From assembly GCA_973895155.1 (NCBI GenBank), contig OZ316897.1:9757832-9821831 (forward strand): DNA of 64,000 nucleotides, in the 5' to 3' direction. Below the pieces are notes generated by a model that ran no database searches, was not told where the DNA came from, and worked only from the letters and a program-made list of their open reading frames with translations. The position numbers and the translations under genes were made by a program. Each line of letters starts with the position of its first letter. Position 1 is the first letter of the stretch. Source of the DNA: Marsupella aquatica. Lineage: Eukaryota; Plantae; Marchantiophyta. Below are positions 14,924 to 38,292 of the stretch, piece after piece.

Positions 14924-15583
14924 ATGGCTCGCAATAAGCAGAAGGCCATGAATCGTTGCAGAGGTGAATCCTCTCAAGCACCTCAATTGTCCTTATATTC
15001 AGACATTGAGATTAACCAAAATAGCCCACATGTATGTGCGATTTGTGATGAGGGAGGGGATCTTATTGTTTGTGATGGGCCTTGCCACCGACATTTCCAT
15101 AAGAATGTTTCCTATCCTTTGGGTCAGCAATGGCTATGCCCAACTATATCCCTGGCTGATGGCCATGTTGGAGAATGGCTTTGTGTTGACTGCAAGAATG
15201 AGGAACATTCTTGCTTTAAGTGCCATGTGTCTGGAAAAATTGGTGAAGAGGTAAGAAAATGTCCAGACCCTCTCTGTGCCCGGTTTTACTGTCGGCAGTG
15301 TTTGGTTCCTGGCACAGCATCATGTGGACTCCATATTTGTCACACTTGTGGACAGGGGCCCAATGATGGGGCTAATGGCTTTTTGGTTCAGTGCATGAGG
15401 TGTCCTAAGGCATGGCACAAGGACTGCCTGCAGTTTATCCAGCAAAGGGGATTTGCCCATGATCGAACAATTTGGGATCACTCAGCGCATGGGCAGCCCA
15501 AGAAGGGAATGTTTTACTGTCCTGACCATGACATTGATCCTACACTAGGCACTCCTGCCAAGAGCCACATTTCTTGGATTTGA
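14924..15583 (+). CDS. Stand-alone EDM2-like composite PHD-finger protein (219 aa), intact, CACTA cargo
   Basis: VCAICDEGG..VCDGPCHRHFH..WLCVDC...HSCFKC...C....CARFYC...CGLHIC..C...VQCMRCPKAWHKDC...IWD...FYCPDHDIDPTLGTP.KSHI. This follows, block by block, the PHD cluster of plant EDM2 as recalled (VCAICDNGG..CEG.C.RSFH...HQCF.C...CPLH.C...CRRCPK.YH..C...AWD...IYC.EHEID..L.TP..H). Confidence 0.88.
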   Translation: MARNKQKAMNRCRGESSQAPQLSLYSDIEINQNSPHVCAICDEGGDLIVCDGPCHRHFHKNVSYPLGQQWLCPTISLADGHVGEWLCVDCKNEEHSCFKCHVSGKIGEEVRKCPDPLCARFYCRQCLVPGTASCGLHICHTCGQGPNDGANGFLVQCMRCPKAWHKDCLQFIQQRGFAHDRTIWDHSAHGQPKKGMFYCPDHDIDPTLGTPAKSHISWI

Positions 15584-16173
15584 TTGAGGCTGGATAGAAC
15601 ACAAACTTGAGATAGATGTTTTTGATGGTTTCACATGGACTTAAACAATTTTCAGAGTGCTAAAACATGTGGACTATTTATATGCAGTTTGATGAACTCC
15701 TCATGTATACACACTCTACGACAGTGCATTGCGGACGGAGGCAATTAATTTTGAGAAATCAACTTTACTATCTGGAACCAGGGTAGGATTCCGATTTTCA
15801 TGCATGTGCTTTGAATGTGAGACCTGTCACTATTGATGTCTAAACTTCACTTGTAAATTTTTCACTGGTGTCACAAACGTCACTCATTCCAGACCTGTCT
15901 GCTCACATTCATAAATACTGGAAATGATGAAGGCACAAAGATTTACGTTCATAGTATCATTCTGATGACACTGTCTGTGATGCTCTATTTGTATGCAAGA
16001 AGGAGAAGGTGCCCCACTATAGTGGATTTGAGAAACTGGGCTCTGTGGGTTTGAGCAATTGGACTGTGGTTGGCATCGGTTGTACAACTGTGACGGTAGG
16101 CCCAATTTTGTATGCATGTCACACTGATTGAGTTTGAAAATCAGAGTTTGAATACAATTTCAATCAAGCTAGC

Positions 16174-19100
16174 ATGGCACAATTGCCACATAATAGGTTA
16201 GGTGTGGGTAGAACTCCAAAGTTGCCGCTCTTCCATCCAACTAGAGTACAACATCGTGATGATGCTTTGTGGGTTCGAGAACAGAAGGCCTGCCACAAGA
16301 GTGGGGACCATAAGATGTACTGCCCTTGTGTGAACTGCAAAGGGAATTATAGGACTAATCGGAATACTGCTAGACTGCACCTTATTAAACATGGTCGGTA
16401 CCCTGCATGTCGAGTGTGGGTGAGAGAGGGACAGGACTCTTCTGATGAAGAGTGGGGTGCTGACTACATGTCACAACATGGCCCTGAGGCATTGAGGGTA
16501 GCAAACCTTCAGCAGGAAACCTGTGCACAACAGCCAACTGTAGATGTTGAAGAACATTTATTTGTAGATGTTCCAGAGTATCCAATTGTGGATGTTCCAC
16601 AGTATCCAACTGTGGATGTTCAAGAACATCCAACTATAGATGTCGAAGAACATATCAGGGCTCTACTGGAAGAAACTTTGTTGAGAACCAGTGTAGAATC
16701 CCCTGAGCATGAACTAGATGATCAGGACCGTTTTGACTTGGATTTTGTACTTGGGGATGATGAGAGTGAAGGAGGTGCCCATCCTATAAACCCCCTTGAA
16801 ACCTCTGAAACTCCTATGGAGACTGATCCTGCACAGTTATCTTTAGATGCAGCAATGCAACCTTTGTTCCCAAGCAGCAAAATAGATGTTGTGTCATTCA
16901 TGTTGCTTCTGCTGAACATCTGTCATAGCCATGGATTCTCAAACAAAGGAGTGAATGCATTGTTGGCTTTGATGGGGGAGCATGGTATGCCTACAGAGCA
17001 TAATCTGCCCAAGAACTTATATGCTGCAAAGCAGCTATTGAGAAAGCTTGGCTTGGATTATGAGAGAATCCCTATCTGTGAGAAAGGTTGCATGCTCTTT
17101 AGGGGTGAGTCTGCCAAGTTAGAAAACTGTTCAGTGTGTCAGCAGCCGAAGATGAAGAGAGTGGGGAATTCATTACAGGCAAGGAAGGTGGTGCGGTATT
17201 TCCCTATAATTCCCAGGTTGAAGAGATTGTATGCCACTGCTGGTACATCTAAACTCATGACTTGGCATCATGAGAATAGAAGCACAGACAACATGGTTCG
17301 GCACGCAGCAAATTCCAAGGCTTGGAAGCATGTGGATACAAATATTGATAAGAAATTTGCAGCTGAACCAAGGAATGTGCGATTTGGGTTGGCACTTGAT
17401 GGGGTGAATCCCTTTGGGAATAATTCCACAGCTTGGTCTACCTAGCCAATCTTGTTGTTGAATTACAATTTACCTCCTTGGCTTACCACCAAGAAGTTCT
17501 TTGTCATGCTAGCTATGCTGATTCCAGGACCTGATTCAGTAACAGAGGAACAGCTGGACATAATATTGGGCCCATTCTATGAGGAGCTGGAGCTGTTGTG
17601 GATGAAAGGAGTGCCCTGCTTTGACAAATTGCCACGCCCAGGATTGTCTCAACACTTCAACCTAAGGGCTGTGCTATTGTGGACAATCAATGATTACCCT
17701 GCATATGGTTTAATATCTGGACAACAACACGCTGGATACAAAGGATGTGTCATCTATGGGCCAAAATGTGTGGCACGTGGTTCTAAGCACTTGCAGAAAT
17801 TAGAGTACAGTGGCCACCGTCGATGGTTAGTAGCAAGGCATCTTTTTCGTAGACCAGACAGTGCACAATACTTTGATGGTGCAATTGAGAGCCGACCTGC
17901 ACCGTGTAGAATGTCAAGCTCTGATAGAAAGAAGTGGGGAGACGAGACAACAGAATATTTGAAGAAGGGAGGAACCAAGGTTGAGGATGAGAGTTGCCCC
18001 ATAAAGGTGCATGGAGTGAAGAGGGCTACTGGTCTGTACAAGTTGCCCTATTGGAACGTAAGACTCCATACTACTACAATGAATTTCTGCAATCTCTTCA
18101 TATGACTTTGAAATGTGTTTACTTCCTGTAGCCCAGATTTTGTAATTGTTGTATTCAATGCCCTAATTTCTGAATTGTGTGTCCACTGCAGGAATTACTC
18201 ATTAACCATTGTCTAGATCCCATGCACTGTGAGAAGAATCTTGCACACAACATTGTGCACACTATCATTGGGACCAAGGACACTCCTTCTGTGCGAGAAG
18301 ACCTGAAGCTCTTACAGGTGCGCCAACACCTATGGCTTGTACCCAATCCAGCTCCCAAGCGTAACGATGACAAATTGTTGATGCCCCCAGCCCCATATTG
18401 CCTGAGCAAGAAGGAAAGAACAAGGTTCTTGGAGGTGTTATTGACCTTGAAAGGGCCCACTGGTTTTTCAAGTTCTTTGGCAAAGTGTGTTACAAAATCC
18501 AAGAAACTCTCTGGGTTGAAATCACATGATTTCCACCAACTCATGCAACAGATTCTCCCTCTGGCAACAATGGGATTACTTGATGAAGGGGTTCGCTTGG
18601 CCATAGTTGGGATGAGCAATATCTATCGCCAGATATGTACGAAGGTGTGGGACCCTTCAATGTATGAGAATTTGATGATGGATGTTGCATTCACTCTCTG
18701 CATTGTGGAAATCCATTTTCCACCAAGCTTCTTTGATGTCATGACCCATTTAATGATTCACCTAGTGGAGGAATTAAACTTGTGTGGCCCAGTTACAGGC
18801 AGATGGATGTACCCAATAGAGAGGAACCTAAAGGTATTGAAGGGTTATGTACGAAACAAGGCACGTCCAGAGGCTTCTATGGCTGAAGGCTATGTATTAG
18901 ATGAGTCTTTGGGATTCCTTTCTGAATACATGTTTGATGCTAAGGGAGAGGGAAAACGAACCTGGGAGTTGGAGGAGGATGCTGGCGTTGCAGGCATTGT
19001 CTTGGAAGGGGCTGCAAAGGAGATAACTTTAAATTGGTCTGAAATGATGGCCATGCATCATTATATATTGGAGAATGAAGAGACAGTGGCTCCATGGTAC

Positions 19101-20074
19101 AGGTATGTAAACCCTGTACCATATGGATCATAATTATGCTGCCCCATTGTGTTTGTATATTCATGGTGGATCATGCACTAATGTCTTGAGTGTTGTTGTT
19201 GCCATGTAGGATATATGATGCTACCAATGAGACTGTTACCAAACGAAGAGTGGATTTCCGGAAGGAATGGATGAGGAAGCCTGCCAATCGAAGAAAACCA
19301 GTGGAATTTCCCCTTGACTGCCAAGAACTGCCACCTTTCAGGGAATGGTTTCAAACATTAGTCAATACCCATAATTTTGAGACAGAGTCTGAGCGGTCAT
19401 TACTATCTACATACTCCACACCACCTAGTTTGAAGGCACGACTGTATAGGGCATGCAGAGCCTATGGGCATCACTGGAGGACTATTCCATCCTTGGGGTG
19501 TTTGAGTGATTGTGATTCTGGTGCATTCAGCACTTTTGATTCTGGGATGGCTTCGACATTCACTGAGAAGCGGATGGACAGGTCTGGCGCAACTAGAGAA
19601 GAATCTGTATAGTATGTAGGGGCCTTGACAGATATCTTAGTACTGAATTACCGCAGCTTGAGGAAAGAGGTGATTCTTTTCAAAGGGAAATGGGCAGATC
19701 CATCATGGACTCCTAAATCCTCTGCCAGTATGAGGTATTCTGAGTCTGGTCTTTGGCAGGTGAATTTCCATAGAGAACTGGGTGTGTCCAAGAAAATGGA
19801 TTACGTTTTCCCAAAGCAAGTGGAGCAGGTTTTCTTCCACCCCAATGAGAAGGGGATAGCATGGAGAACAATCCTCCACAAAGAATCCAGGTCCACAAGG
19901 GTGTTAGGTGATTACACAGATGTTGATTTCCATGCTACAATGGAAAACAATGCCAAATTACACATTGAATTGGCTAAAGCCTGTAGGACTAGAGCAAATC
20001 CAGGACCAAGTACTGGTCCCAAACGAGGCAGAGATGCAGAGGGATCTGCAAGAAAGGGTAGGCCTAAGCAGTGA
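16174..20074 (+). pseudogene. tnpD: CACTA TnpD/TNP2-like transposase; exons 16174-18057, 18192-19102, 19210-20074; in-frame stops at 17443 and 19610
   Basis: YCPCVNC (transposase-associated domain); YFPIIPRLKRLY, EPRNVRFGLALDG.NPF, NLPPW, DYPAYG (Transposase_21); D.MHCEKN, GLKSHD.H, FFD.MTHL..HL, RWMYPIER (DUF4218-like); YVFP.QVEQVF (DUF4216-like); GT-AG introns. Confidence 0.95.
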
Positions 20075-20161
20075 ATAGGTTTTAGGTGTGTGAAGTCCAT
20101 AGATGGACTACATGTATGGACTATATATGAAATCAGACTAATGTTTTGCCCATTTGTGCAG

Positions 20162-23100
20162 TTGGTGAATGCAGCCTGTGAAAGGAAGATTGCAGGGGTT
20201 GTCACATCCTGTGAATGCTTATGAGGAGGCCCGAAAGCGGAACATAGAGCATAATGTCAGCATTATGCGTGATCTAGGACTGGGGCCAGACTGCATGCTG
20301 ATGTGTGTGTTAAAATGTCTGTTGCAAATTTGATTCAGTAGATATATGGAGTTGTCAGGTTCATGTTCTGTTTTCATATTCCATATTGGTCTCATACTAG
20401 TATGGAACCTGTACATAAGTACCATTATTACTGTGTTATAGATTCTGCTTGCATGTATGTTTGATCTGCATTGGTGTATGTTGATGATTGCTTTGTTCCT
20501 TAGAGGCCCAACCACACATGTACAACGACAGAGAGAAAAGCCTGCATTGGTGAAAGGTACTTCAACTGGAACATTGCCAAAGAGGAGGAGCTCTAGACTA
20601 TCACAAGTTACCAAGGTGAACATGGCAGAGTCTGGTGATGATGGCTATGCCAGTGCTGGGTATGACACTGAGGATTCTGATATTGGAGGGTCAGAACCTG
20701 AGAGTGAACAACAGGTAATGCTTGAACTTCATCATCCTAAACCCTAAATCCTTGTCCTTGTTTCAAAGTATTTGTTAATATGCCTACGTTGTCCATGATG
20801 TAGGTACAGAAACAAAATCGTGGTCCTAAGAAGACTGGGCCTGGTGGAGGTGGGCTGGTGAGATGTTGGAAAGACCCAGACATTGGACTGTTATATGAAA
20901 GTGAGTGGATTGTACTGATAAACCTTTTCAGTGTGTTTGGAAGTTGATATTCTACATTTTCCTAAAATTCACTGAAGTGCTTGGTGGTGTGTGTTTGTTT
21001 AGTGGTTCCATCAGCATCTGAAGGCAGATCAGGTCAATCTGACGTACTACATTCCAGAGGATCTTCAGGTAATACAAATCTGCTCGTCATGCATATGCAA
21101 GTGCATTTGCTCAACTTTTCAATGTACATATTTTCTGAGTGAAAGCATGTGTGTGCATTGCAGGCGGGGCCTCTGAGATGCGCAGGGAACAAAGGCATGC
21201 TAAGAAGATGTTTGATAATGCTGCCAAAGTACGAAGGAATCAGGGAGATTTGCCCAAACACATTAAAGTGAGTATTGTACTTTTTTTGAATGTAGATTTA
21301 GACATAGATCCTCTCTGTTATTGTGTGTATAAAACCTGGACTATGCATAAATTCCAGAGTTATGAATTGACATTGCATCTGAAATGCAGATTTATGACAA
21401 TGATATTGATGATTCTGATCCCAACAAACAGTACTGGCTGGAGGAACTTCGTGGCAATGTACTCAGAATCTTTGATGTATCAAAGCCAAAATGGACTGAT
21501 CATCCACGAGTTCATATAACCAGTGTGTGGAAGAACATGGCAACTGAGTGGGAGTATGTGGGTGGGGAATTTATTGACAATAAATTCCAGAGTCATTGTC
21601 GTGGCATATTGAAGAGAGAGCGCCATAAAATGCATGTTTACTGGAAGAAAGTTTGCAATGAGGATCCAACCAAACCTGGGCCATCTGGTGTTGATCCAAA
21701 GAAATGGGCAGCTTTGGTATCTCATTTCACCAGTCCAGCATTGATATCTTTGAGTAAACAAATGACTGATAAAAGAGCACGAGTGCAAGATACCAGTCAC
21801 TTTGGTAGAGGAGGGCATGCTGCAGCAGCAAAGAGAATGGTAAACTGTCTATATCATTTTCACTATCAATTCTGTCTTGTTTGTGAATCTTGATGAAAAC
21901 AGACTCTAAGTTTCTCATTCATTGTGTGTTTGAACAGAAGCAGAAGAGAGGATCAAGCCCAAGTATATCTGACCTGAAAGAAAACCTTGGTAGTCAGGGC
22001 TCATTGCCAAAGGTGACAATGAGCCCATCATTGGCAAGTGTAGAAGGTCAGACTGGTAGTTTTTTGGGAGCAAAGGTGAGCCCGTCATTGGCAAGTGGGG
22101 AGGGTAAAAGCGCTAGCTTACTGGGGCAAGGATACAGACATGGATCAGCTGTGAGTATTGCCATTCCAATCTGATTTGTACATCATTTTCCATTTGATAG
22201 AGTGTTGTGTCGTTTGTTAGTTTGACAATGAGAATGTTGTGTTGGTTTGTGGTTCATTTACAGACCCCACATTCAAAAGAAGAGATCACTGCCATTGGGG
22301 CTGTCAAATTGGATGTCGATGAGTTGAAAGGCACTGTGAAGGAGTTGACAAACATGATGACTATATGGATGGCACATCACTCCAGTAATGCACAAGTTCC
22401 AACATTTGTTCCTAGTCACAGTAAGTTGACTACAGCTACCAAAGAAGGTAGTAGAAAACGATCTCTTACTTTTTTAGGTGATAATGGAGGTAAAATTCTC
22501 TATCATCTATTCACTGTCCATTCAATGTAATTATTGTGGTGTATATATGTCATTGTATGTTTATAATGTTCTTGCATGTTCTAGTGTGATTATATGTTGC
22601 TGGTGAATACATGTTTGTTTATGCATTTCTCTTGTGTGTGTTTTATGACAGCATCTTTAGGGGAGCCTCCTGTGTCGCAGGGAAGACCAACTGACACAGC
22701 TAACAGTACTCTGAAGCAAACTGAATTGGAAGTGAACCTTTTGCCATCTAAGTTGCCCAAAGAAGCCATTTTAGATGCCTTTCAGTTACCAGAGGATAAG
22801 TCGACTCAGTTGACACTAGATGTAACCCCAGAATCATCTGAGTTGCCAAAAGAAACTCCTGTTCCAAGTGAGCATGATGACACTCCGTCAACTAGAAAGG
22901 GAAAGAAGAAAAGGAAGAAAGGATCTTCAGCAAATGCATCACCTACATAGAAGAAACCAATGCAGTCTCCTAACCCCATTGCAAAGGTAAATGTGTGTTT
23001 GATTTGAGTGTTCTTCTATCTTTCAATTTCTGTTTATTGCATTTTTAACAAAATGTGTTGTTCACAGTTTGCAAGAGGAGATTTGGTGAAGATGAAGAGC

Positions 23101-23327
23101 GTTGTGGACAATTCCATGATAGTGGCAAAAGGTGAGGTGACAGGGCTGCCAAGAGAAGATAAGTTTCATTGTGCAGATTTTGAAAGCCCTTTCTTGCGAG
23201 TGCATGTGATTGAAGTGTTTGTAGATTGGCATTGCCATTTGCCAATGCAGGGGAGAAACAATCTAAATTATCTGATGTGAAAGGGATGAATGCCCTATGG
23301 AACTCTAGATTGCTTAAGAAGCAATAG
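20162..23327 (+). pseudogene. CACTA second gene, TnpA / Ptta-En/Spm-like, multi-exon; exon boundaries approximate
   Basis: P.GVDPKKW..LV.HF, KRARVQ..SHFGRGGH motif (21391-21840) typical of Transposase_24-like proteins; C-terminal GDLVKM...IVAKGEV...LRVHV domain; many GT-AG introns; at least one stop and one frameshift. Confidence 0.72.
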
Positions 23328-23599
23328 AAATAGCACTGTGTCAAGAACACTAGACATGATAGAATCAACTCTATTTTTCTATAAAACATGCAGAGTGATT
23401 GGTATGTCAGGTTGTAACAATTGACAATCTAATATTATTGATGCCAATGTAATTTTGTTTCATAAATTTGCATTGAGTTCAATAGTTACTGTGAGACTTA
23501 TGAAGGTATCTTGTATGAATGTCAATTAGATTTGTGATATATATGGAATGTTTCTTTAAGTTTTCATTCAGCAAATCTATTGAATGGCTTTGTAATGTA

Positions 23600-24375
23600 T
23601 GATTTTTGAATGACATGAAGTTTTATTTATCATGATCACTTAAATTTGAATTTCTCCAAATCATTGAATATTTCACCTAAATGATTGGCTAGAATGACTG
23701 ATGTAATGGTCATTATCCACAATTATCTTTGTGACCAATATGACTCAACTCTGGTCATTAAAGACATAGACTAAATGATTCAAAGAATGACATATACAAT
23801 GACCGCTCTCATGGTCATTATAAACAAGTCCACTATGACTCACTTTATGTCATTCAAGACATGTCATTAATGACTAATGTGTATCTTTATGTGTCTCCTC
23901 CTAATTGAACCACGTATCTTAATATGACTTGTTTATATCATAGTCATTTTGGATACGTCCAAAATGACCCAAATGTATTGCCAAATGGTGAATCCTCTTT
24001 GAACCATGTGTCACTATTTGATTTGTTATATAATGTACGTCATTTTGGACAAGTCCAAAATGACCAATGTTATTTGTTTTTTGATTGCCACGTGTCGTTG
24101 TGTGATTGGGTACGGGGACCGTCAACGGTCAACGGCAATTGACCGTCGATGGTGATTTGAGTCGTCATTTTGGACCGTTCAGCATTTATGACCATATCAT
24201 AAAAACCGTCATTTAGGATAGTATGAAATGACCACATGTTTTTAGCGTCATTTGTCCAAAAGGACCGTGACCAAAATGTCCGTTGTGATGCGTCTGGAAA
24301 GACAAGAACGATTGCGTCATTGTTTTGTTAAAAAGACCTGATTAATAGTCATTGTTTCTGTCATAAAATACATTG
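23600..24375. repeat. Right subterminal AATGAC/GTCATT motif cluster of the CACTA
   Basis: Same motif as the left end, densely repeated in both orientations. Confidence 0.88.
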
Positions 24376-24391
24376 TTTTGTACTAGTGGAA

Positions 24392-24591
24392 GTGCATTTT
24401 CCTTGGCTATCAGGAAAGGTGTGAAGGGTTATAGGTTATGGGATCCAGTAACCTGTAAACTAATTGTTAGTAGAGATGTGTCCTTTAATGAATCCAGATC
24501 ATCAAAGGAGGGGGAGAGTTCTCAGGACTCCCATACTGACAAGGGGAAATCTCCCATCCCGGACCGGGTTGAGGGGGAGATTAGTCATGAT
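24392..24591 (+). pseudogene. Copia integrase C-terminal fragment between the CACTA and P-like insertions
   Basis: CIFLGY..GVKGYRLWDP...VSRDVSFNE motif. Confidence 0.92.
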
Positions 24592-28395: not shown

Positions 28396-28674
28396 GTGCA
28401 AGTGAGGTTTTCCTTGGAATGGGAACATTTTTATAATTTTTGGTTCCCCCGCGAAAAGCCCCACGGGGAGGGCAAACAGACAGACCAGAAGGCCAGACCA
28501 AGCGACATAAAACAAAGCCGAACACACAGCGCACAGGCACACATCACCAGCGCATATCCCACAGCCCCCCGACCACCAAACAGTGGAAAAGGGAAAATCA
28601 ATCACCAACACAAGCCCAAGCCCAACATAAGAGGGCATTCAACAGTCAGATCATCCAGGAAGCCACGGTCCCCC

Positions 28675-31600
28675 TCAAGCAAAAGAATTGACAGCAATGC
28701 TGCCACTGCCTAGCCAAACCCTACGCAGGTCATCCATCCATGCCTTTGCCCGAATCAGGCGGGTGCACTTCCTGCCCGGGGGGCAGCGCCGACTAACAGC
28801 AAAAGCGTTCTCCGCTGCCTCATTCAGAACAAGTCCCAAGTCAAACACCCGTCTCCCCCCCACCTGAAACATGTGAGTGTTCCTTCCCGTCCAGAGTCGC
28901 CACAGAATATGGTGCAAGACGAAGATCCGGGCCACTTGCACAGGCTCCTTCCCGCAGGCCGCCTCTAAAAGAGCCATCAGACCTCGTCCCATTGGCAAGC
29001 CCAGAATCTGCAACGAATCCTGACAGAGTAGCCAGCAACGGACCGCATGTGTACAGTGGAAGAACACGTGGGGGATCGTCTCCAGCCATCCTTTGCAAAG
29101 CTTGCAATCTCCATTACTCACCTCCATTCTGAGCGCACGTGCCCCAGTGAAAAGGCCCCCTACAATAATCCTCCACACAAAGGTCTTGCCTCTAATCGGA
29201 AGATCAGACCCCCAAAGCTTAGCCCAACACATATTCCAGCGCATCTCAGGCCAGGACAGTGACCAGATCCGATTGAGGCGGTCATGGGATGCAGTCTTAG
29301 GCCTTAAGAAATCATACACTCTACAATTCTCGATTCTGAAGTCCTTCAGCGGCTCCGGTCTGTCTGTCCATCTCCACTGCTTGGCATACAAGTAGTATTC
29401 AGATCGGCAATGGTCTGCCCGCCAAAGGCACTCCAAGAACGAACGAGCCATCGTTCGATGCTCATCAGAAAAGCCACGCATATTGTGCCATCGTAGCGGT
29501 AGGTCCTTCCAACATCCATCCTCCGTCGACCATCCATCACCAATAGACCTCAATCCCAGCCTGCCACAAATCGCAGCAATCTCTATGAGGGCTTTATTCG
29601 GAAGGGAATTGAAGCCCACCATACACCTGAGGGTATCCATGATGCTCCACCGGGAAGGTGGCCCCGTCCGCCCAGGATCGAAGAATAAGTGGGCTCTCAC
29701 TAGCTCCCAGCTTCTCCAGAGACCTGTCGTGTAGGGGAGCCCACTAAATGAACGAGGCGTGCACAGTAGCAGCCGGTCCTGGAAGGAGTATCCATTTCGC
29801 CTAATAATTTTGTAGTTCGTCCACCCCATCAATTTCAGGTTGGCTGCCAACATCCTAGACCATTCCGTCTCAGGCGCGTTAAGTGCCTTAGTGAACCATT
29901 GAGAGAGTAATGCATCAGAGTGACTGCGGAAGTCCCGGAATCCCAGCCCCCCTTCCACACGTGGCAAAGCCATCCGATCCCAGGCCACCAGGGGGACCTT
30001 CCGTCCTCCAGTGGCATTATATCCCCATAAAAATTCCCTGCTCAGAGCAATCATCTTCTTCGCCAGGCCTACAGATGCCTTGCAATACATTACATGGTAG
30101 ATCGGGATAGCAAGTAGTACCTGTTTGACCAGTAGTGAACGGCCAGTAAAAGAAAGAAGTTTGTTGGACCAAACAGAAAGTCTGGCACAAATCTTATCCA
30201 AACAGAATTTGTGCAGTTGTTCCGTGCTCAAACTCTCCCCAAAAGGTGCCCCCAGGTATTTATGTATCTCGCCTCTTCGGCTGATAAGGCAGCCTGTGTT
30301 GTTCAACCACTCTGGGATCCTTTCCAATGCCAATGGGATCACAACGGATTTCTTCAGATTCAGTCGTGCCCCACTAGCCATCTCATAGCATTCTAGAGCA
30401 GTGGTTGCTTCCTCAAAGGCACGCTCTGTGGCCGGGATAAACATCCCAACATCATCCGCAAACAGTCTATAGCAGATAGTGAATCCAGGGGTGATCTGTA
30501 GTCCACAAAGTCGGCCCTCCGCCATCTCAGTATCAAGAAAGTCCATAAGAGGTTGCGTGGAGATGACAAACAACAATGGTGACAGTGAACAGCCCTGTCT
30601 TACCCCTCGTTTAAGCTCAAATGTGTTTGATAGTAATCCGTTCACCAAGGCCCTGGAAGATGCCTGTGCTAGCAGGGCCCTGACCAGCATAGTGAAGCGT
30701 CCGCTGATGCCCAGTAGGTGCATGCATTCCCATAAGTAGTCATGTGAAACACGGTCAAAGGCCTTCTCGAAATCCAGTTTTAGGAACAATGCCTCTCTCC
30801 TCTTGTTGTGCACCCAGTCACATGTAAGCCAGGCTAAGGAAATATTTTCAAGAATGTGTCTTCCAGGTATAAATCCAGTCTGTTGCGGGCTAATAATCAT
30901 GTGTAGAATCGGTTTGAGTCGTATAGCGAGGATCTTGGCAATGAGCTTGTATATAGTATTTAACATTGTCAAAGGGCGCCAGTCCCTTAAAAACCGTTTA
31001 TCAGGTTTCTTGGGTATGAACTTCACAATTCCTTCACAGATTCCAACGTCCAAAGCCCCCGTAAGCCAAAACTCCTGTATCATATCCACCAGATCTTGCC
31101 CGAGAAACTCCCAGCAAGCTCTGTAGACCTCAGCTGTCATGCCATCCGGTCCCGGCATTTTGTCACAAGGCAGGAGCCACAGCACCTCCTTCACCTCCTG
31201 GTATGACAGGAGTCTCTCCATCCTCAAATTCTTCGCTCCAGAGAGTGCAAACCTCGTGTTGCCAAGCAGTCTGTCTCTGGCCACACGAACCTCTTCCAAC
31301 TCCGCTTCCAATCGCGGATCAGGCGAGTATAATGTTTGGCAGAACCTTTCTACCTCCTTCAGGATTTCTCCAGGGTCAGCTACTGTACTCCCGTCCTCCC
31401 TATTCAGGGAAGGCATGGACTCACGAGATCGCTTAGCCCTCACTGTAGCAAGAAAACTTTGTTGACTCGTCTCCTTCACTTAACCACTTAATTCTGGCTA
31501 GCCGTCGTCCTCTGTGTGCTTCCTCCAACTCTGAAGCATGTAGAGTGTCTTCCGCGTCCATGAACTCTGCAATGTCTCCCTCTGAATGGTGTTCTATAAT

Positions 31601-32593
31601 GGCCATCTTAAGAACTCGCAACTGAGCTCGCTGAGCTGCCATCTCCATCTCAGTTGTCCTTGGTTGGGCTTGAATTTCCTTCAATGTTTGACGCATTTTC
31701 CAGCTGCCCTTAGCAAAGCGCAGCCGCGGGTCCACAAAATCTCCTCGTCCCACCCTCCAAGCAGCCTCCAACCGCAGAATGTCCTCCCTTCTCTGCAGAA
31801 ACGCCGGGTTGGCCATGAAGAGACGCACTTTGCCTCTCTCCACCGTCTCTGTCAGTCCAGAGAGCTGCACATTCAACATAACAGGATCATGATCCGAAAG
31901 GGCTGAGCCCCCGTCATGCAGGAGTTCCACCTCACGAAGCCATTCTCCCCTTTCACTAACATAAATCCTGTCGAGTCGAGACTGTGACATCTCTCCATTC
32001 CGATTCCTTCTCCACGTGAAGCGCGGGCCAGCAGCTCCTCCCCTAATGTCCCACGCGTCTGTCAAATTAAATCTCATCTTCAAGAATCTCCAAAACTCAG
32101 CCTCTCTACCGCGGATCAGCGGCGATGTACCAGTCGAGTCCGTTCTGCGTTCCGTCATATTGAAGTCACCACACAGCACCCAGTCATTGTGTGGTAGCAT
32201 CACCTTTAGATCATTCCATAGCAGAGCTCTTAGTCTAGCTGAATTGGGAGCATATATACACGCAACTCCGAAGGTCACCGCTCCCTTCTCGATCACAGCC
32301 CATACCGCCCTTCCCATATCCAGTGTTCCCGAGCCCACCACCCTCAGCTTAGGGTGTACCAGTAGTGCCGTTCCTCCCTTTCCCTCCTCCGGCTCAGAAG
32401 AAAAGTGCTGATATGATGGGAGAATAGCCCGCAGAGCCATATCAAGTCTAAATTGATCAGCTTTCACTTCTTGAAGGGCCAGAATCCCCAGCGGTACCTT
32501 CAGCGATCTTACCCAATTCTTAACAATATGCTTACGGTTAGGCTCACAAAGTCCACAAATGTTCCAGGATGCCACCCTGAGCCTTCCGTCCAT
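28675..32593 (-). CDS. LINE ORF2 (APE endonuclease + RT + zf-RVT) with one frameshift at about 31460
   Basis: SWNICGL, LQEVK, IYAPN, GDFN, SRLDR, SDHDPV (endonuclease); KMPGPDG, WRPLTMLN..YK, KLDFEKAFDRV, GVRQGCSLSPLLF, LFADD, YLG.P (RT); C..C....ETIPHVFFHC. The two ORFs overlap at WLSEGDESTKF / FLATVR. Confidence 0.94.
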
Positions 32594-32647
32594 CCTCCTA
32601 CTATGCCAAAATTATATCCTGGCACAGCCACCCCCCATCCTTGCGTC

Positions 32648-34906
32648 TCATAGTCTATTCCGTCCCCCGGGAGACATCCCCGTCACATCTCGACCCATAG
32701 GTCCACTCAAATATCCATTAATAGAGCCAGCAGGAGAGACACGCATGGGGGATGCTATATGCGCCACTCCACCGCCAAAAGGAGCATTCCCCTGGACCCT
32801 CGCATCACAATCGCTCCCTCTAGGAATGGTGAGCAGCAGTCGCTTGTGCATTGTAATCCCGTCCGCACTTCCTGCATCAGACATGGCACCACGTGAGAAT
32901 CTAATTGATCTTTGCTTCTTAGCCTCACCTTTGGCCTTCTCAGTCCTTTCAGAGGGCGGTGTGCGAAGTTCTTGCTTGCGGGCTCTAGCTTTGAATTTGC
33001 TGTGTGAAATATAAGCTTCATATTCAGACATCTCCGCATCAGATTCTTCGTGAAAGGAGAAGGTCTCATCATTTCCATCACGCGAATTGGGAGTAGTAAG
33101 AGCTTCAATTCCTTGTTCCACTGAATTTCTCTGAGTAGTCCGTCGCCCAATTGACGGGACAACGACAGCCAGTAGTGGAATCCTGGCAGCCTCTGTGTCT
33201 TGTGAGTCCTCCATGCAGCCAGCCAGCCCAGGCGTCAGGAGACAATCAACACTTCTCTCCCTGGTTCCCGAAGAGAAAGCCGCCACCCGCAAATCCGGGT
33301 TCTCCCGCAGCAGCGGCCCCGAGTCCCGCCCTGCCATCTCCCCAGGAACCGGACTAACAATTAGCAACTCCACCTGAGCGATATCCTCCTCCACTAAAAA
33401 GGGTACCTCCAGCACAGGAGGCACCATGGCTCCCCGAAAAATAGCACGTGCTTCAGCATTTTCTTTAGCCCTCAACACCTCCTCCTGATCAGCCTCAGAG
33501 TGTCTCTCATCATCTTTCTCGTCCGGCGGGTCCGCTCCTGTCCGTAGAGCACCGGCAGTCTCCAAGATTACTTTACATTCACGGGCCAGGTGACCTCTTT
33601 GGTTGCATCGAAAGCAGTGATAGGGGATATTTTTAAACGTCACCGGTTGCCAGATAATAATGTCATCACGAATTCGAATCTTCACACTGGCAGGGACTTC
33701 CCTGTCCGTGTCCCAAAGGATGCAAGCCCGATCGTGGGGATACGAACTGAATTCGTTCCCCTGAATGTAGTACAGCAGAGTCCCTAGAGAGCACGCAATC
33801 TTTCTTCTGCAGCCCTCTAGTGCAAGATCCCTAAACGGTATCTCAATCCACACTGGGAGCTTCGTGAAGTTCTCACATTTAACATCAAAGGATGGATCCC
33901 ATGGGAACGTGTATATAAATCGTCTCTCCATAAACCATGGTGCGTAGTTGAGTGCCAGATCCCTGTGATTAGGATCCTCAAACACTATCATGTAAAAGTT
34001 CTTCCCTACGAATTTAACCTGAAGTACCGACCATCCCTCCTGGTTTGTCATCACTTCGTCTACCCATGCTCTAAAATCATTGAGGAGCGGCGTTCTTCCC
34101 ATGAAGTAGCATATGAGAGCGCAATTATATAGTTGTCTCACATTACGAGCTGCTTCCGGTAGGTTCCATTCCACTTCTGCAAAGAGTCTCTTGTCAAGAT
34201 CACCTTTGGACCTGATCGCAATCTCGCGCAGGATCTTGATACACTCTTCAGATTCGTCATCCTCCACGGGCGCGTCCTGCATCTCCACATTTTCTTGTGG
34301 CACCTCACTCCCCACCATTGCATCCTGGTTAACCTCATTCGCCCCTCTTCCAATTGTTCCACGCCCCCAGTGCAGAGCTTCGCCTTCCTTCTCCCCTGCT
34401 CCATCCCCCTCCTGCAGGTTCTGAGGCAATTCCATTCCACTCACCGACTGCACCTTAGGTCCAGGTCCATTCACCGGACGCTCATTCCCATTCAAGTAAT
34501 ACAACTGAGATCTGGCCGCAGTTGTCTCCCCCAAATTCGGGTCGTTCCTCCCAGAGCGCGCATCTTGTGCAGAGAATCCAATAGCAGGTCCACTGACCAT
34601 AACACCCCGCGCAGGTGATCGCCCCACAGCTTCACCGGGTATCCCCCCCACCTCAAGCCTTGCAGCAGGCTCCCCTTGTGTCCTCCGATCTACTCGTCCA
34701 CCAGCTAAGCGTCCCCCCCTCGCGCTCCTGCGGCTCGAGGGTCCATAATAGTCTATCCCCTGTTCCTCCATGATACAAGTGGCCTTCCTTGACTCTACAG
34801 CCTTGCATCCAATTAGGAATAAAATAGTCAAGGTCTTCTTGTACTCACCAGAAGATTCGACGATGGCTCGAAGTCCCGCTGCCACTCCACACCTCCTCGT
34901 CTCCAA
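32648..34906 (-). CDS. LINE ORF1 (DUF4283/RRM-like plus CCHC zinc knuckle); first ATG probably MEEQ at about 34771
   Basis: VGKNFYMIVF..P..RD.AL..APWF, LPVWIEIP, CFRCNQRGHLAREC; uninterrupted ORF. Confidence 0.92.
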   Translation of the reverse strand: METRRCGVAAGLRAIVESSGEYKKTLTILFLIGCKAVESRKATCIMEEQGIDYYGPSSRRSARGGRLAGGRVDRRTQGEPAARLEVGGIPGEAVGRSPARGVMVSGPAIGFSAQDARSGRNDPNLGETTAARSQLYYLNGNERPVNGPGPKVQSVSGMELPQNLQEGDGAGEKEGEALHWGRGTIGRGANEVNQDAMVGSEVPQENVEMQDAPVEDDESEECIKILREIAIRSKGDLDKRLFAEVEWNLPEAARNVRQLYNCALICYFMGRTPLLNDFRAWVDEVMTNQEGWSVLQVKFVGKNFYMIVFEDPNHRDLALNYAPWFMERRFIYTFPWDPSFDVKCENFTKLPVWIEIPFRDLALEGCRRKIACSLGTLLYYIQGNEFSSYPHDRACILWDTDREVPASVKIRIRDDIIIWQPVTFKNIPYHCFRCNQRGHLARECKVILETAGALRTGADPPDEKDDERHSEADQEEVLRAKENAEARAIFRGAMVPPVLEVPFLVEEDIAQVELLIVSPVPGEMAGRDSGPLLRENPDLRVAAFSSGTRERSVDCLLTPGLAGCMEDSQDTEAARIPLLAVVVPSIGRRTTQRNSVEQGIEALTTPNSRDGNDETFSFHEESDAEMSEYEAYISHSKFKARARKQELRTPPSERTEKAKGEAKKQRSIRFSRGAMSDAGSADGITMHKRLLLTIPRGSDCDARVQGNAPFGGGVAHIASPMRVSPAGSINGYLSGPMGRDVTGMSPGGRNRL

Positions 34907-35804
34907 GGCGCACCAAGGTCAGTCCTTCTTCTCACCGCTGTGTATGCCCGCCCATCCTTCTATTCGCAGGTTACGACGTTGAAACAGCTCTCAGCTCATC
35001 CCTATTCTCTCTCCTCTCGCTGCCAAACCTTCATACAGAATCGTCTCACCGCTCCATCCCAGGTTATGAGAAACGGAGAGTGGCATCAAAAAGTCTCCAC
35101 GCCGTCAATGAATAAGCCACGATTGTCGAGGACGTCCCACTGTCCCGTGCTCCTTCGATCCTCTTCAGCTAAAAGGCCTTCCCTCACACCTCCGTAAGCG
35201 ATTACCTCCCATCAAGTCCCCGCAGCTCCTCCCCTTTGGAAGAGACCATTCTTGGTCACATCAACCAGCCAGCACAGCCACATACGGAAAATTGATCCTC
35301 CCAATCCCATCTACCATCAGTCCGCTTACGCTCCGGTCTCCTCAAAGCCCATCCTGGCCCTTTCACTCATCACTTTTCCGCCACTCTCGGTTATAGCCGA
35401 GCACAGAATCGGATCCACCCAACACTCACCGATTTATCCACCAATGTGTAACAGTTAAGACTCTCCTTCGCCATCGCTTGTATCTGAGGAAACATTCTCC
35501 ATCGAGCAAACTGCCCCCGTACCCACCATGCCCGTGTCTGTGTACACACAGTGCGTCTCCCTTCTCCTACACCCTAAACCGCCCTAAAACCTTCTAAAAT
35601 CTCCCGAGCCGTCCAGAGCATGGAGATGTCGAGAGTGAGCAAGAGTGGGTTCATTCGCATGCGGTGTCTCCTGCGTATCAAAACCTTCCCCCTCGGGAAG
35701 CAACGCCCACACCCGATCCAGGTGTGGATGATTCCAAGCTCTTGAGAGAGAGCACAAGTCAGCGCCATGACATGTTCTTTTTATATTGTTAATAATATGT
35801 TTCC

Positions 35805-37230
35805 GTGCAAGTGAGGTTTTGAAAACCACCTCCATTAATGGACACCCTGTGACATTGCTTGTGCCTAAAACAACCCTGTATACCAACAACTGACTGGCTA
35901 GTTACATTGAAAACCTCAGCACAGGTGGTACGGTCACAGTCCTAGACATTCCCTCCCTCTTGATCATCAAGTATGCCCTTCACAGCCATAGAATCCCCTG
36001 TCCACTTGACCTCTAACTCCCACAGGCCCCAACAAAGCAAACTTAAACTTGGCTCAACGGAGGAATACAACCCACCTCTACCTGAACTGCTCCCTGCAGC
36101 AGAGCTATCCTCTCTAAAGAAATTCAGAATAGAATTTTGAGATGGAAACAGATCACGAGCATCAGGCTTCCTTGGTCTCCCCTTCTTTCCTGCCCTCAGT
36201 GCAGCCTGGGTATTGGTGACAACATTCTGAAGTGCATCCATATGATCCCGACTGACAAGGTGTTGCCTTAAATTGTGTTCCAAATTGGATTTCTTAGGGC
36301 ACATGTCAGTATGTAGCTTGCCACAGACTGTACATCTAACCTTAAACAAAAATTACCTTTGTGCAAATGTTGGATCAGTGGGAGATGGTGTGATAGAGAA
36401 CACTTCTACCACGCCACCTACCTCTGCATTCAACTTTCCAACTATTTCCACACCAGCCCCTATTTGCATACTATGATCAAATAGTGGTTGCTGTATAGTG
36501 TCAGTAGCCGTCACCAAAGCTCCAGCTAAACCCCTTCGCTTACACCAGTTCTCCTTGTGTTTAGGGTTGGTCAGGTGCTTTGTCTTGAAGTTGCTAAAGC
36601 AATTTGTGATGGACTTCAGCACCTGTGAAGTGGCTGCATTCCCATAAGTCTCCCTACACTCTAAGCATTCGAGATGACCTCGACACTCCCCTCCCTCATC
36701 CCATGTTCGCACTTTCCACTTGTGCTCACCAAAGCCCTTCTGGTTCACCCAGGATCGTAGCTTCAACCACTCATCATTCCAGGCCTTTGATGCAGCCTCA
36801 AACATGAGGTGAGACTCAAAGGAGCCTGTGACAGGCTGTACAGTAGCCTGTACTGGCACCCCCCTTGTGTTTGTCCTTGAGACAATGGAGTCGTGCCTGC
36901 CACATTGGACACAGTGGCAGCAGATGAATGAGAGGAACCAATAGTGACCCTCTCAGCAAGCAAGGCAACTAAGGGTAACTCTGCAATCACGTAAATTGTC
37001 CCTTGAAGTTCAGTCACCGCAACAGTCTTCTCTTAAAAGTGTCAGACTCGACCAGGCAACCTCTCATCCCAAAAATCAAAGTCAAACTCTACTGAACCAA
37101 CACATTTCAGACGAAAATCTGCCAGAGTCTGCCCTTCTTTGAAGGACATGACACAGATTGGCGTATCAGGCTTTCCTCCCTCCTCACCTTTTTCTACCAA
37201 TCTGACAAAGCTCATGCCTAGGTGTGCCAT
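35805..37230 (-). pseudogene. P-like transposase, N-terminal part: two C2H2-like fingers, AT-hook, PIP box, Cys cluster
   Basis: CLEC...KHL..PKH; CTVC...QHL..RDH; KKGRPRK; QNSILNFF. The frame continues across the LINE TSD as GGFQNLTC|TLCDSIKREDDFCGRVHREAEA into the 27702-28352 ORF. Confidence 0.78.
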
Positions 37231-37573
37231 GATGGATAGTTATACAGGCTGTGAAAGTAAGGGATAGGGATTAGGTACATGAACCTATCATACAACAATG
37301 GACAGACATGGAAAAGATCAGGACTCAAGTCAACCATTCACAATGTCATTTGAACACTCAATCTATTGTAGTCAATGAAACTTACTTAAGTCCATTTCAA
37401 TTCATCAAACTTCCACTTTGTTCAACCAAATAGTTAAGTCCATTTCATTCATTGAAATACTTAAGTCCATAGCATTCAACCAAATACTTAAGTATAGTTT
37501 AGGTTGTCTTATGGGTCCACTACAAAAAAGGTTCAAGTTATAAGATGGTGGAATTAGTAGCAATCATGCTGGT

Positions 37574-38292
37574 CTAGTCATGGGTACTTGGGATATCAGA
37601 ACCCTCTGGGATGACATGGCGAGTACAATAAATCATGCGCCACTATCCAATGTCCCAGGTGTCTCGGCCCCTCACCCTTCTCCTCAAGTGCCTGTCTGTT
37701 GTTGGTCCTTCATCACGACACCATGCACGAGGGCATCTACGACATTGGACAAAATCCCAAATGCCCTCCCGATACTCCTTACAGACCTCACAATAATGTC
37801 GTGGGCATATAAGAGCATCGGGATGTGCATCAGGGTTATCTGGATGGCGGGTGAAAGGCATTTCCCCCAATCGCAGAAGTGTCCGAAGACAACCCACATG
37901 GTAAAATGAGTAGCAGTCATCATGAGAACACTGGATCACAAGGGGCTTGTCTGTGGTGGGTCTCAAGGTTCTGCCAAGGAGTCCACAACCAAAACATCTT
38001 CCTCTGTTTTGCTGATAGAGGTCACAAAGCCAAGCTGCAGCCCAATCATGACCTTTGGAAATGACAATCCGCTGACATGTAGGTCCATGGCCATCTTCCT
38101 CATCGGGGTTGTGCCATCTTCCTCATCGGGGTTGTGGCCATCAACTACATAATGAAAATGGTGACCACAAGGGCCATCACAGAACAAAACAGTTCCTCCC
38201 TCATCACATTCAAAACAGCAAGGGGGATCCATACGAAGGTGCTCCCTATGCCCAAATCTTGGATCTAGCAACTGACGAGCAATGTGTGCCAT
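37574..38292 (-). pseudogene. Second stand-alone EDM2-like composite PHD-finger gene (cargo of the P-like element), disrupted by a 23-bp tandem duplication and one stop
   Basis: Removing one copy of CCATCTTCCTCATCGGGGTTGTG (38091-38136) gives one frame: CFECDEGG..FCDGPCGHHFH...WLCDLY...RCFGC...QCSHDDCYSFYHVGC...ICPRHYCEVC...VQCRRCPRAW...DTWDIG*WRMIYCTRH. Confidence 0.85.

What the first reader, a model, noticed from the sequence alone, without database searches (positions are those of the whole stretch)
14924..38292. Two unrelated DNA transposons carry the same module: a stand-alone EDM2-type PHD reader directly upstream of the transposase (candidate TE-encoded anti-silencing system)
Seen: the CACTA element has an intact 219-aa PHD-cluster ORF (14924-15583, +) about 590 bp before its TnpD ATG. 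The P-like element has a homologous but strongly diverged ORF (38292-37574, -) about 340 bp before its transposase ATG. Both are intronless, start a few bases after a CAG acceptor-like site, and consist only of the PHD cluster. Both share CDEGG/CDGPC/HFH and W-L-C signatures. Established: EDM2's composite PHD binds H3K9me2-containing marks and, in the ASI1/IBM2-AIPP1/EDM3-EDM2 complex, promotes full-length transcription through heterochromatin. Sequence-specific TE anti-silencing proteins are known (VANC of VANDAL MULEs) but are not PHD readers. Inference: DNA transposons of different superfamilies captured, or exchanged, a heterochromatin-reader domain stripped of EDM2's other domains. It could act as a decoy, shield or adaptor against silencing, or steer integration into heterochromatin; both elements sit inside an old retrotransposon. 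I am not aware of this having been described, but could not search.
Basis: partly seen in the sequence, partly recalled or inferred. Interest (0 to 1): 0.93.

Follow-up and report, generated by a model that had tools for sequence, protein, structure and literature searches.

The report
Transposon-carried EDM2-type PHD reader genes

Summary
An 18.6-kb CACTA element (5791-24388) carries an intact 219-aa ORF (14924-15583) that is nothing but an NSD/EDM2-type triple PHD cluster. It lies 590 bp before TnpD and keeps all 24 putative zinc ligands. Diverged relatives (83%, 70% and 41-46% identity) show the same PHD-then-TnpD order, a conserved stop position and dN/dS of 0.10-0.17. It is therefore a selected transposon accessory gene, not a passenger.

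The neighbouring 17.8-kb element (24592-42354, 8-bp TSD) is P-type. Its PHD copy is homologous but is not an ORF. It has a 23-bp tandem duplication that shifts the frame, an in-frame TAG and a lost Cys. Intact relatives of 226-247 aa exist elsewhere.

Whether the two transposon types share one capture or made two is unresolved (AU p = 0.50). A BRCT gene shared by the P-type element and a related CACTA element favours a shared cassette.

No RNA or binding data could be obtained, so the anti-silencing role remains inference.

This scan has noted the same module many times on other DNA of this genome. I found no paper that describes it.

The parts
5791..24388 (+). CACTA (En/Spm-type) transposon, 18,598 bp, inserted in a retrotransposon integrase region
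   Evidence: TIRs are CACTAGAAGAAAAC and, reverse-complemented, CACTAGTACAAAAC. The 3-bp TSD is GAA on both sides. Subterminal repeat arrays lie at about 6150-10100.
14924..15583 (+). Intact stand-alone PHD-cluster gene (219 aa) of the CACTA element
   Evidence: Three NSD/EDM2-type fingers are present and all 24 putative Zn ligands are kept. The AF2 model has pLDDT 82 and resembles PZP and NSD PHD tandems. dN/dS is 0.10-0.17 against relatives.
14416..14712 (+). 297-bp MITE of the P-type family inserted 211 bp upstream of the PHD ORF
   Evidence: It has CTCGGGGG TIRs and an 8-bp TSD, GTTGCAAT. Contigs of two runs hold the empty site, seen as the joint 14407->14713.
16174..20074 (+). TnpD transposase gene of the CACTA element, disabled in this copy
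   Evidence: Pfam hits are Transpos_assoc, Transposase_21, DUF4218 and DUF4216. There is an in-frame TAG at 17443-17445 and a GT..AG intron at 18058-18191.
24592..42354 (-). P-type transposon, 17,763 bp including a nested LINE
   Evidence: It has CTCGGGGGGG(G)TCAC TIRs and an 8-bp TSD, GTCATGAT. Transposase pieces 27702-28352 and 26903-27472 resemble Tnp_P_element, TNP-like RNaseH_N and GBD by Atlas features (0.91-0.93), in the expected order.
37574..38292 (-). Pseudogene copy of the P-type stand-alone PHD-cluster gene
   Evidence: The lesions are a 23-bp tandem duplication at 38136-38091, an in-frame TAG at 37645-37643 and a Cys to Tyr change in finger 1. Intact relatives are P0155 (247 aa, 65-69% identity) and P0156 (226 aa).
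39296..39622 (-). Single BRCT-domain ORF (108 aa) upstream of the PHD pseudogene in the P-type element
   Evidence: Pfam BRCT hits are weak (E 0.002). It matches both repeats of the tandem-BRCT gene of the CACTA contig L010 (E 2e-11 and 1e-9).
28675..34906 (-). LINE nested inside the P-type element, splitting its transposase region
   Evidence: Pfam hits are RVT_1, zf-RVT and Exo_endo_phos. The ORFs are listed.
42759..45521 (+). Non-autonomous relative of the P-type element in the same retrotransposon
   Evidence: It has CTCGGGGGT(T/C)TCAC TIRs and an 8-bp TSD, AGCAAGTG.

Best explanation
The PHD ORFs are transposon accessory genes.

Origin (shown and inferred). An ancient liverwort-lineage CACTA clade and a P-type family each carry a small gene ahead of the transposase. 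The gene encodes only the NSD/EDM2-type triple-PHD histone-tail-reading module. Its closest cellular relatives are liverwort EDM2-like proteins, which carry this module at their C-terminus, so it was probably taken from such a host gene.

State in this window (shown). The CACTA copy is intact. The P-type copy is decayed.

Expression (inferred). The coding exon follows a conserved YAG acceptor-like site, and the protein ends at a conserved stop. The gene is probably expressed from the element's own spliced transcripts, as En/Spm expresses its products, and yields a free 25-kDa protein.

Mechanism (inferred). The protein would bind histone H3 tails of silent-type chromatin. Finger 1 keeps the CxxCDEGG[DE]L acidic signature of H3K4me0-reading PHDs, and EDM2's module binds H3K9me2-containing tails. 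It lacks all other EDM2 domains. It would therefore act in trans as a competitor or adaptor at the host's heterochromatin-reading step, helping these long, repeat-filled elements stay expressed.

What is shown and what is not. Gene identity, conservation, selection and synteny are shown. Histone binding, expression and the anti-silencing effect are inferred.
For: Identity:
- Pfam finds three NSD-type PHD models in order.
- NSD3/NSD2 PHD1-3 match by sequence, E 6.6e-10.
- The fold matches PZP and NSD PHD5-C5HCH histone readers.
- All 24 putative Zn ligands are kept.
- Of 393 HMMER hits at E up to 0.001, those checked by name or by Pfam are EDM2 orthologues (DNMT1-RFD plus PHD cluster; named ENHANCED DOWNY MILDEW 2 in Ricinus and Selaginella). 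The best cellular hits are liverwort proteins such as Marchantia Mp1g03210.

Accessory-gene status:
- The PHD-then-TnpD order recurs in L001/L002 (83% aa identity), in L006/L007 (about 45% PHD identity, 29% TnpD identity) and in the 13-kb contig L010 (PHD, BRCT, TnpD).
- dN/dS is 0.10 (dS 0.86) and 0.17 (dS 1.25).
- The stop lies at the same position after ..HISW[IL] in five lineages; L006 runs two residues further.
- The stand-alone proteins form a supported clade (99/96) with its own derived characters: His to Cys in finger 2 and a roughly 20-aa loop deletion.
- The family is high-copy in contigs of three organisms.

P-type gene:
- Intact relatives of 226-247 aa exist. pN is 0.30 against pS 0.76.
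- In two contigs a same-strand gene starts 288 bp downstream of the PHD gene.

EDM2 function: PMC7529245 and PMC3632883.
Against: - No transcript evidence. No RNA run holds the stretch, and all laid runs are contigs.
- No binding data.
- Which EDM2 domain recruits AIPP1/ASI1 is not known to me, so a PHD-only protein may be unable to act as an adaptor.
- Finger 2 of the CACTA-type clade has a changed ligand and a shortened loop, so its specificity may differ from EDM2's.
- In this window neither element is autonomous: TnpD has a stop codon and the P-type PHD is dead.
- A co-occurring BRCT gene points at least as much to DNA-break or repair chromatin as to silencing.
Confidence: 0.5

Rival explanations
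1. Integration or excision adaptor. The PHD protein (with the BRCT protein in elements that have one) tethers the transposition machinery to, or recruits repair factors at, chromatin with a particular H3 state. It would steer target choice or donor-site repair rather than counter silencing.
For: - Both carriers are cut-and-paste elements that make double-strand breaks.
- A BRCT gene travels with the PHD gene in the CACTA contig L010 and in the P-type element.
- Four DNA-transposon insertions lie in one retrotransposon here.
- Reader-guided integration is known for chromodomain integrases (my own knowledge). RAG2, which evolved from a transposon (PMC4411706), carries an H3K4me3-reading PHD finger (my own knowledge).
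Against: - The window's CACTA lineage has no BRCT gene.
- The complex test of the PHD protein with the TnpD N-terminal 423 aa gave no answer.
- Nesting in old retrotransposons is also what weak selection against such insertions produces.
Confidence: 0.22
2. Two independent captures. The CACTA-type and P-type genes were taken separately from host EDM2-like genes, so there is no shared or exchanged module, only convergence on the same host domain.
For: - The AU test does not reject a tree that separates the P-type clade from the CACTA-type clade (delta lnL 0.12, p 0.50).
- The join of the two clades has SH-aLRT 85 only and links two long stems of 1.2 and 3.2.
- The P-type protein keeps the ancestral FYHxxC ligand and the long finger-2 loop, and it lacks the ..LGTPxRxHISW tail of the CACTA-type.
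- By blastx, copy 2 is about 30% identical to host and transposon proteins alike.
Against: - Best trees place the two transposon clades together.
- Both are cut to nearly the same module boundaries.
- A second gene, BRCT, is also shared. The P-type ORF matches the CACTA BRCT protein at E 2e-11. Two double captures are less likely than one cassette moving.
Confidence: 0.35
3. Upstream coding exon of the transposase. The ORF is spliced onto TnpD, giving a transposase with an N-terminal PHD cluster, as in Rehavkus-type transposases that contain a PHD finger.
For: - It lies on the same strand, 288-590 bp upstream of the transposase.
- An acceptor-like YAG lies before the ATG.
- En/Spm-type elements use alternative splicing (PMC13547354).
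- Rehavkus transposases hold a PHD finger (PMC6446971).
Against: - The stop falls at the same place after a conserved C-terminal motif in five diverged lineages (L006 two residues further), and this motif is also the end of the module in EDM2-like proteins.
- TnpD has its own conserved ATG and N-terminus.
- In L010 a BRCT gene lies between the PHD gene and TnpD.
Confidence: 0.08
4. Non-functional passenger. The ORFs are Pack-TE-like transduplicated host fragments with no function.
For: - The P-type copy here is dead.
- DNA transposons of plants often pick up gene fragments (my own knowledge).
Against: - dN/dS is 0.10-0.17 at dS of 0.9-1.25.
- ORFs stay intact at 41-46% identity.
- Synteny with TnpD is conserved in five contigs of three diverged lineages.
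- All zinc ligands are kept.
Confidence: 0.04

Closest known systems
EDM2 (ENHANCED DOWNY MILDEW 2) and liverwort EDM2-like proteins (e.g. Marchantia Mp1g03210)
   Same: The same triple PHD cluster, alignable from the first finger to the ..TPxRxHI.. tail. EDM2's module binds H3K9me2-marked chromatin and supports full-length transcription through intragenic heterochromatin (PMC7529245).
   Different: The transposon proteins are the module alone (213-247 aa). They have no DNMT1-RFD-like N-terminus and no ELP/methyltransferase-like region. The CACTA-type has a His to Cys ligand change and a roughly 20-aa loop deletion in finger 2. They are encoded inside transposons.
NSD1-3 PHD1-3 / PHD5-C5HCH and PZP domains (BRPF1, JADE1, AF10)
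   Same: Sequence match to NSD3/NSD2 PHD1-3 (E 6.6e-10). Fold matches to PZP and PHD5-C5HCH tandems, which bind the H3 tail.
   Different: Identity is low (17-23%) and whole-model TM-scores are low. There is no SET, PWWP or other catalytic context.
VANC anti-silencing proteins of VANDAL (Mutator-like) elements
   Same: Both are accessory genes encoded by a DNA transposon beside the transposase, and VANC is thought to counter host silencing (PMC5735166, PMC10398659).
   Different: VANC binds specific DNA motifs of its own element and is not a PHD reader. Here no DNA-binding domain is seen and no effect on methylation is shown.
Reader domains built into transposition enzymes: chromodomain integrases of chromoviruses, the PHD finger of Rehavkus transposases, the RAG2 PHD finger
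   Same: A mobile element carries a histone-reader fold (Rehavkus: PMC6446971; RAG2: PMC4411706).
   Different: Those readers are fused to, or form an obligate subunit of, the enzyme.
TET/JBP dioxygenase genes carried by heterogeneous fungal DNA transposons
   Same: One epigenetic-pathway gene is found next to the transposases of several unrelated DNA transposon lineages (PMC12730594).
   Different: That gene is an enzyme that removes a mark, in fungi. This one is a reader without catalytic domains, in a bryophyte-type plant.

Membership tests
NSD/EDM2-type triple PHD cluster | Three consecutive fingers matching PHD-1st_NSD, PHD_NSD and PHDvar_NSD in that order | tested here: met
   ORF1 residues 36-59, 94-127 and 139-170. 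The pieces of copy 2 hit the same three models more weakly. P0155 and P0156 hit PHD_NSD.
NSD/EDM2-type triple PHD cluster | Complete set of zinc-ligand Cys/His (3 x 8) | tested here: met
   ORF1 has all 24 positions filled. One is a clade-wide His to Cys change in finger 2. Copy 2 fails this feature: one Cys is replaced by Tyr, and it has a frameshift and a stop.
EDM2 orthologue (full protein) | N-terminal DNMT1-RFD-like domain and C-terminal ELP / N6-adenine-methyltransferase-like region flanking the PHD cluster | tested here: not met
   ORF1, P0001-P0009, P0155 and P0156 are 166-247 aa and hold PHD models only. EDM2 orthologues show DNMT1-RFD plus the PHD cluster in 1,200-1,400 aa. The transposon gene therefore shares a module with EDM2 and is not an EDM2.
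EDM2-type reader function | Binding of H3 tails carrying H3K9me2 (in combination with the H3K4 state) | not testable with these tools
   Only inferred from homology and from the conserved CxxCDEGG[DE]L signature of finger 1.
CACTA / En-Spm superfamily | CACTA termini, 3-bp TSD, TnpD-type transposase, subterminal repeats | tested here: met
P superfamily | 8-bp TSD and short TIRs | tested here: met
   GTCATGAT on both sides of the element. Two further family members also have 8-bp TSDs.
P superfamily | Transposase homologous to P-element/THAP9 transposase | tested here: inconclusive
   There is no Pfam hit even at E 10, and the PDB sequence search gave only chance hits. Atlas features give Tnp_P_element, TNP-like RNaseH_N and GBD at 0.91-0.93 for two adjacent pieces in the right order.
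Transposon anti-silencing factor (VANC-like in function) | Expression causes loss of silencing marks on cognate elements | not testable with these tools
   No expression or methylome data could be reached.
Pack-TE / transduplicated fragment | Neutral evolution, fragmentary ORF, sporadic presence within the family | tested here: not met
   dN/dS is 0.10-0.17. The module is complete. It is present beside TnpD in five diverged contigs.

The most novel reading that the evidence does not exclude
A portable 'chromatin toolkit' made of a stand-alone EDM2-type H3 reader, often with a BRCT protein, has moved between unrelated DNA transposon superfamilies (CACTA and P) in liverworts. It works as a molecular mimic of the host's heterochromatin-reading module, letting the elements escape silencing or choose their chromatin targets.
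Probability: 0.25. Interest if true: 0.85.

Novelty: new variant of a known kind. Interest (0 to 1): 0.62.

Why it matters
Transposon accessory proteins that deal with host chromatin are known in only a few forms: VANC, chromodomain integrases and the RAG2 PHD finger. This one is a free-standing copy of the very module that plants use to read heterochromatin inside genes. It is kept under purifying selection in an old, high-copy CACTA clade and is also present in a P-type family. That gives a concrete, testable candidate for how DNA transposons interfere with, or exploit, H3K9me2-type chromatin. It also offers a natural minimal EDM2 reader for biochemical work, and a possible case of gene cassettes passing between transposon superfamilies.

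Tried and rejected
- Expression: the look-up of sequencing runs found no RNA run. Read laying saw contigs only, so it shows presence and copy variation but no transcripts.
- A paper search for the Logan run prefix did not identify the samples.
- P-type synteny outside the window could not be confirmed. The contigs with P0155 and P0166 came without DNA. The metagenome scan with the P-type alignment found nothing. A protein search with the P-type transposase N-terminal ORF found nothing.
- Complex prediction of the PHD protein with the TnpD N-terminal 423 aa returned 'no answer', which is neither support nor evidence against.
- Pfam (E up to 10) and a PDB sequence search did not recognise the P-type transposase pieces. 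The UVR8/RCC1 hits are chance.
- The ORF downstream of the PHD gene in L004 could not be shown to be BRCT (E 0.083, and no match to the other BRCT proteins).
- I first suspected that the inverted repeat 14416-14530 / 42240-42354 marked one 28-kb element. It is a MITE plus the end of the P-type element, each with its own TSD.
- For the tree, copy 2 was read through in a script with X at the duplication junction and at the stop. For the codon comparison, one duplication unit was left out, so real residues stand at the junction, and only the stop was read as X. By reference, only a single uninterrupted piece was searched.

Full report
**Observation**

Window 14924-15583 (+) is an intact ORF of 219 aa. 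Pfam places three NSD-like zinc-finger models on it in order: PHD-1st_NSD at residues 36-59, PHD_NSD at 94-127 and PHDvar_NSD at 139-170. Nothing else is found on it. All 24 positions that serve as zinc ligands in the family alignment are Cys or His.

The ORF ends 590 bp before an ATG at 16174. That ATG opens a TnpD-type transposase, identified by Transpos_assoc, Transposase_21, DUF4218 and DUF4216.

The second stretch, 38292-37574 (-), is homologous. tblastn with ORF1 gives E 4.5e-9 within the window, and the CDEGG, CDGPC, HFH and WLC signatures are shared. It is not an ORF, for three reasons:
- a 23-bp unit (CACAACCCCGATGAGGAAGATGG) is tandemly duplicated at 38136-38091 and shifts the frame;
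- an in-frame TAG lies at 37645-37643;
- one ligand Cys of finger 1 is a Tyr.

**Anatomy of the two elements**

The CACTA element spans 5791-24388 (18.6 kb).
- Its termini are CACTAGAAGAAAAC and, reverse-complemented, CACTAGTACAAAAC. Its TSD is the 3-bp GAA.
- Its 5' subterminal region holds long repeat arrays.
- Its TnpD carries an in-frame TAG at 17443-17445, where relatives have Trp, and a GT..AG intron at 18058-18191. This copy is therefore not autonomous, although its PHD gene is intact.
- A 297-bp MITE (14416-14712) with CTCGGGGG termini and the 8-bp TSD GTTGCAAT lies 211 bp upstream of the PHD ORF. Contigs of two runs hold the empty site.

The second element spans 24592-42354 on the minus strand.
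- It has CTCGGGGGGG(G)TCAC termini and the 8-bp TSD GTCATGAT.
- A LINE (RVT_1, Exo_endo_phos) is nested in it.
- Pfam does not recognise its transposase. Two adjacent pieces nevertheless look like Tnp_P_element / TNP-like RNaseH_N and RNaseH_N / GTP-binding insertion by language-model features (0.91-0.93). That is the order of those domains in P-element transposases.
- With the 8-bp TSD, I accept a P-superfamily assignment at about 0.85.

Both elements, and a 2.8-kb non-autonomous relative of the P-type element (42759-45521), are inserted in one retrotransposon integrase region.

**Is the CACTA-borne gene a passenger?**

It is not.
- A word-indexed search found four stand-alone proteins of 213-225 aa at 83, 70, 52 and 44% identity.
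- An exhaustive HMMER search found 393 relatives. The five best are stand-alone proteins of 166-245 aa.
- Their contigs show the same layout. L001/L002 align with the window from 30 bp before the ATG through the spacer into TnpD (74.6% nucleotide identity, 83% protein identity).
- L006/L007 have a PHD gene about 45% identical, followed after about 420 bp by a TnpD N-terminus 29% identical to the window's.
- The 13-kb contig L010 carries PHD, a tandem-BRCT gene, then Transposase_21 and DUF4218. It is colinear with the window element except that the window lacks the BRCT gene.
- Nei-Gojobori dN/dS is 0.10 against L001 (dS 0.86) and 0.17 against L008 (dS 1.25). More distant pairs are saturated at synonymous sites while pN stays at 0.35-0.45.
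- The stop codon falls at the same place, after a conserved ..IDPTLGTPxxxHISW[IL] tail, in five diverged lineages; L006 runs two residues further. This argues for a true C-terminus rather than an exon spliced onto TnpD.
- A YAG lies 3-12 nt before the ATG in the window, L001, L008, L003, L006 and L009, and in copy 2. This suggests that the coding exon is reached by splicing from an upstream leader, as in En/Spm. That point is inference.
- Contigs of three organisms hold thousands of pieces of this element family, the PHD region included.

**What the module is related to**

Sources name some of the long hits ENHANCED DOWNY MILDEW 2 (Ricinus, Selaginella). These proteins have a DNMT1-RFD-like N-terminus followed by the PHD cluster at about residues 210-440.

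The best cellular hits to ORF1 are liverwort proteins: Marchantia polymorpha Mp1g03210, Riccia sorocarpa, M. paleacea and Calypogeia fissa. In the 600-770-aa proteins among these, the cluster sits at the very C-terminus and ends in the same ..TPxRDHI.. tail.

By sequence, ORF1 also matches PHD1-3 of NSD3/NSD2 (E 6.6e-10). An AlphaFold model (pLDDT 82) matches PZP domains and NSD PHD5-C5HCH tandems. All of these are H3-tail readers.

The gene is thus an EDM2/NSD-type reader module, but not an EDM2, because the other domains are absent.

**One origin or two?**

In a careful tree the ten CACTA-type stand-alone proteins form a clade (99/96) on a long stem. Copy 2 groups with the intact proteins P0155 (247 aa, 65-69% identity) and P0156 (226 aa) in a P-type clade (99) on an even longer stem. 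The two clades join, but only at SH-aLRT 85. A tree that separates them is 0.12 log-likelihood units worse (AU p 0.50).

Character evidence cuts both ways.
- The CACTA-type clade has a His to Cys change and a roughly 20-aa deletion in finger 2. The P-type proteins lack both, and they also lack the C-terminal tail. P-type is therefore not derived from within the sampled CACTA-type clade.
- On the other hand, the P-type element also carries a BRCT ORF (39296-39622) that matches both repeats of the BRCT gene of the CACTA contig L010 (E 2e-11 and 1e-9). Two linked genes in common make a shared cassette more likely than two double captures.

I leave this open, at roughly 60:40 for a shared origin.

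The P-type gene family also shows constraint. Its ORFs are intact at 59% identity, and pN is 0.30 against pS 0.76. In two contigs a same-strand gene starts 288 bp downstream of the PHD gene. I could not obtain that DNA, so I could not show that the gene is the transposase.

**Mechanism**

Established knowledge: EDM2 binds H3K9me2-marked chromatin. With ASI1/IBM2 and EDM3/AIPP1 it promotes full-length transcripts through intragenic heterochromatin (PMC7529245, PMC3632883).

Finger 1 of the transposon proteins keeps the invariant CxxCDEGG[DE]L..CDG motif. From my own knowledge this resembles H3K4me0-reading PHDs such as AIRE PHD1, which is also a weak PDB hit.

My best reading is a free reader of silent-type H3 tails that competes with, or stands in for, the host's EDM2-like reader. 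It would help 18-kb, repeat-filled elements to be transcribed. The main rival is a role in target choice or break repair, which the BRCT partner gene suggests. A structure-based test of PHD with the TnpD N-terminus gave no answer. No step of either mechanism is shown.

**Novelty**

Full-text searches found no description of a transposon-borne EDM2-type reader. The term sets were CACTA + PHD + EDM2; transposon-encoded + PHD finger + anti-silencing; CACTA + PHD finger + BRCT; and EDM2 + liverwort + transposon.

Related precedents are:
- VANC;
- PHD fingers inside Rehavkus transposases;
- RAG2, a transposon-derived protein whose PHD finger I know of from my own knowledge;
- TET/JBP genes spread over several fungal transposon lineages.

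Earlier notes of this scan describe the same module many times elsewhere in this genome. I used them as leads only.

**Verdict**

This is a real, selected transposon accessory gene, intact in the CACTA copy and dead in the P-type copy. It is a new variant of a known kind. Its function is unproven.

Noticed in passing
window 6156-10100: The 5' subterminal region of the CACTA element holds an 83-bp tandem array (6156-6479). After it comes a run of roughly 570-bp repeats rich in GGTCATT motifs, about 3.5 kb in all.
   Followed up: partly
window 14416-14712: A 297-bp MITE of the P-type family is inserted in the CACTA element 211 bp before the PHD ATG. Contigs of two runs hold the empty site. The MITE region has several-fold to about ten-fold higher contig depth than the rest of the stretch in the four laid runs, so the MITE family is very abundant.
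   Followed up: partly
window 17443-17445 and 18058-18191: The CACTA transposase has an in-frame TAG where relatives have Trp, and a 134-nt GT..AG intron. Some contigs of two runs lack about 107-117 bp at this place.
   Followed up: partly
window 39296-39622 (-) and L010 3587-4402: A BRCT gene accompanies the PHD gene, as a single domain in the P-type element here and as a tandem BRCT in a related CACTA contig. The two are specifically similar (TTHIVA..W.AV..WSW motif).
   Followed up: partly
window 38467-38949 (-): A 160-aa ORF without any Pfam match lies between the BRCT ORF and the PHD pseudogene in the P-type element. A contig with an intact P-type PHD gene also has a 146-aa gene upstream.
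   Followed up: no
window 46280-47540 and 62753-64000; also 1523-1867: Long inverted repeats (about 1.2 kb, 87-95% complementary) lie 15-17 kb apart. A third partial copy sits near the window start. They may be the ends of another large element or LTR copies in opposite orientation.
   Followed up: no
window 40600-41800 (-): The leader of the P-type element contains several imperfect direct repeats (…GACTGCGCTGCGCTGCCGTGAC…, …CCCTTGGAGGT(T/C)GCTCCT…GCAAATG(C/T)TGTCGCACATTGATG…), which suggests internal duplications.
   Followed up: no
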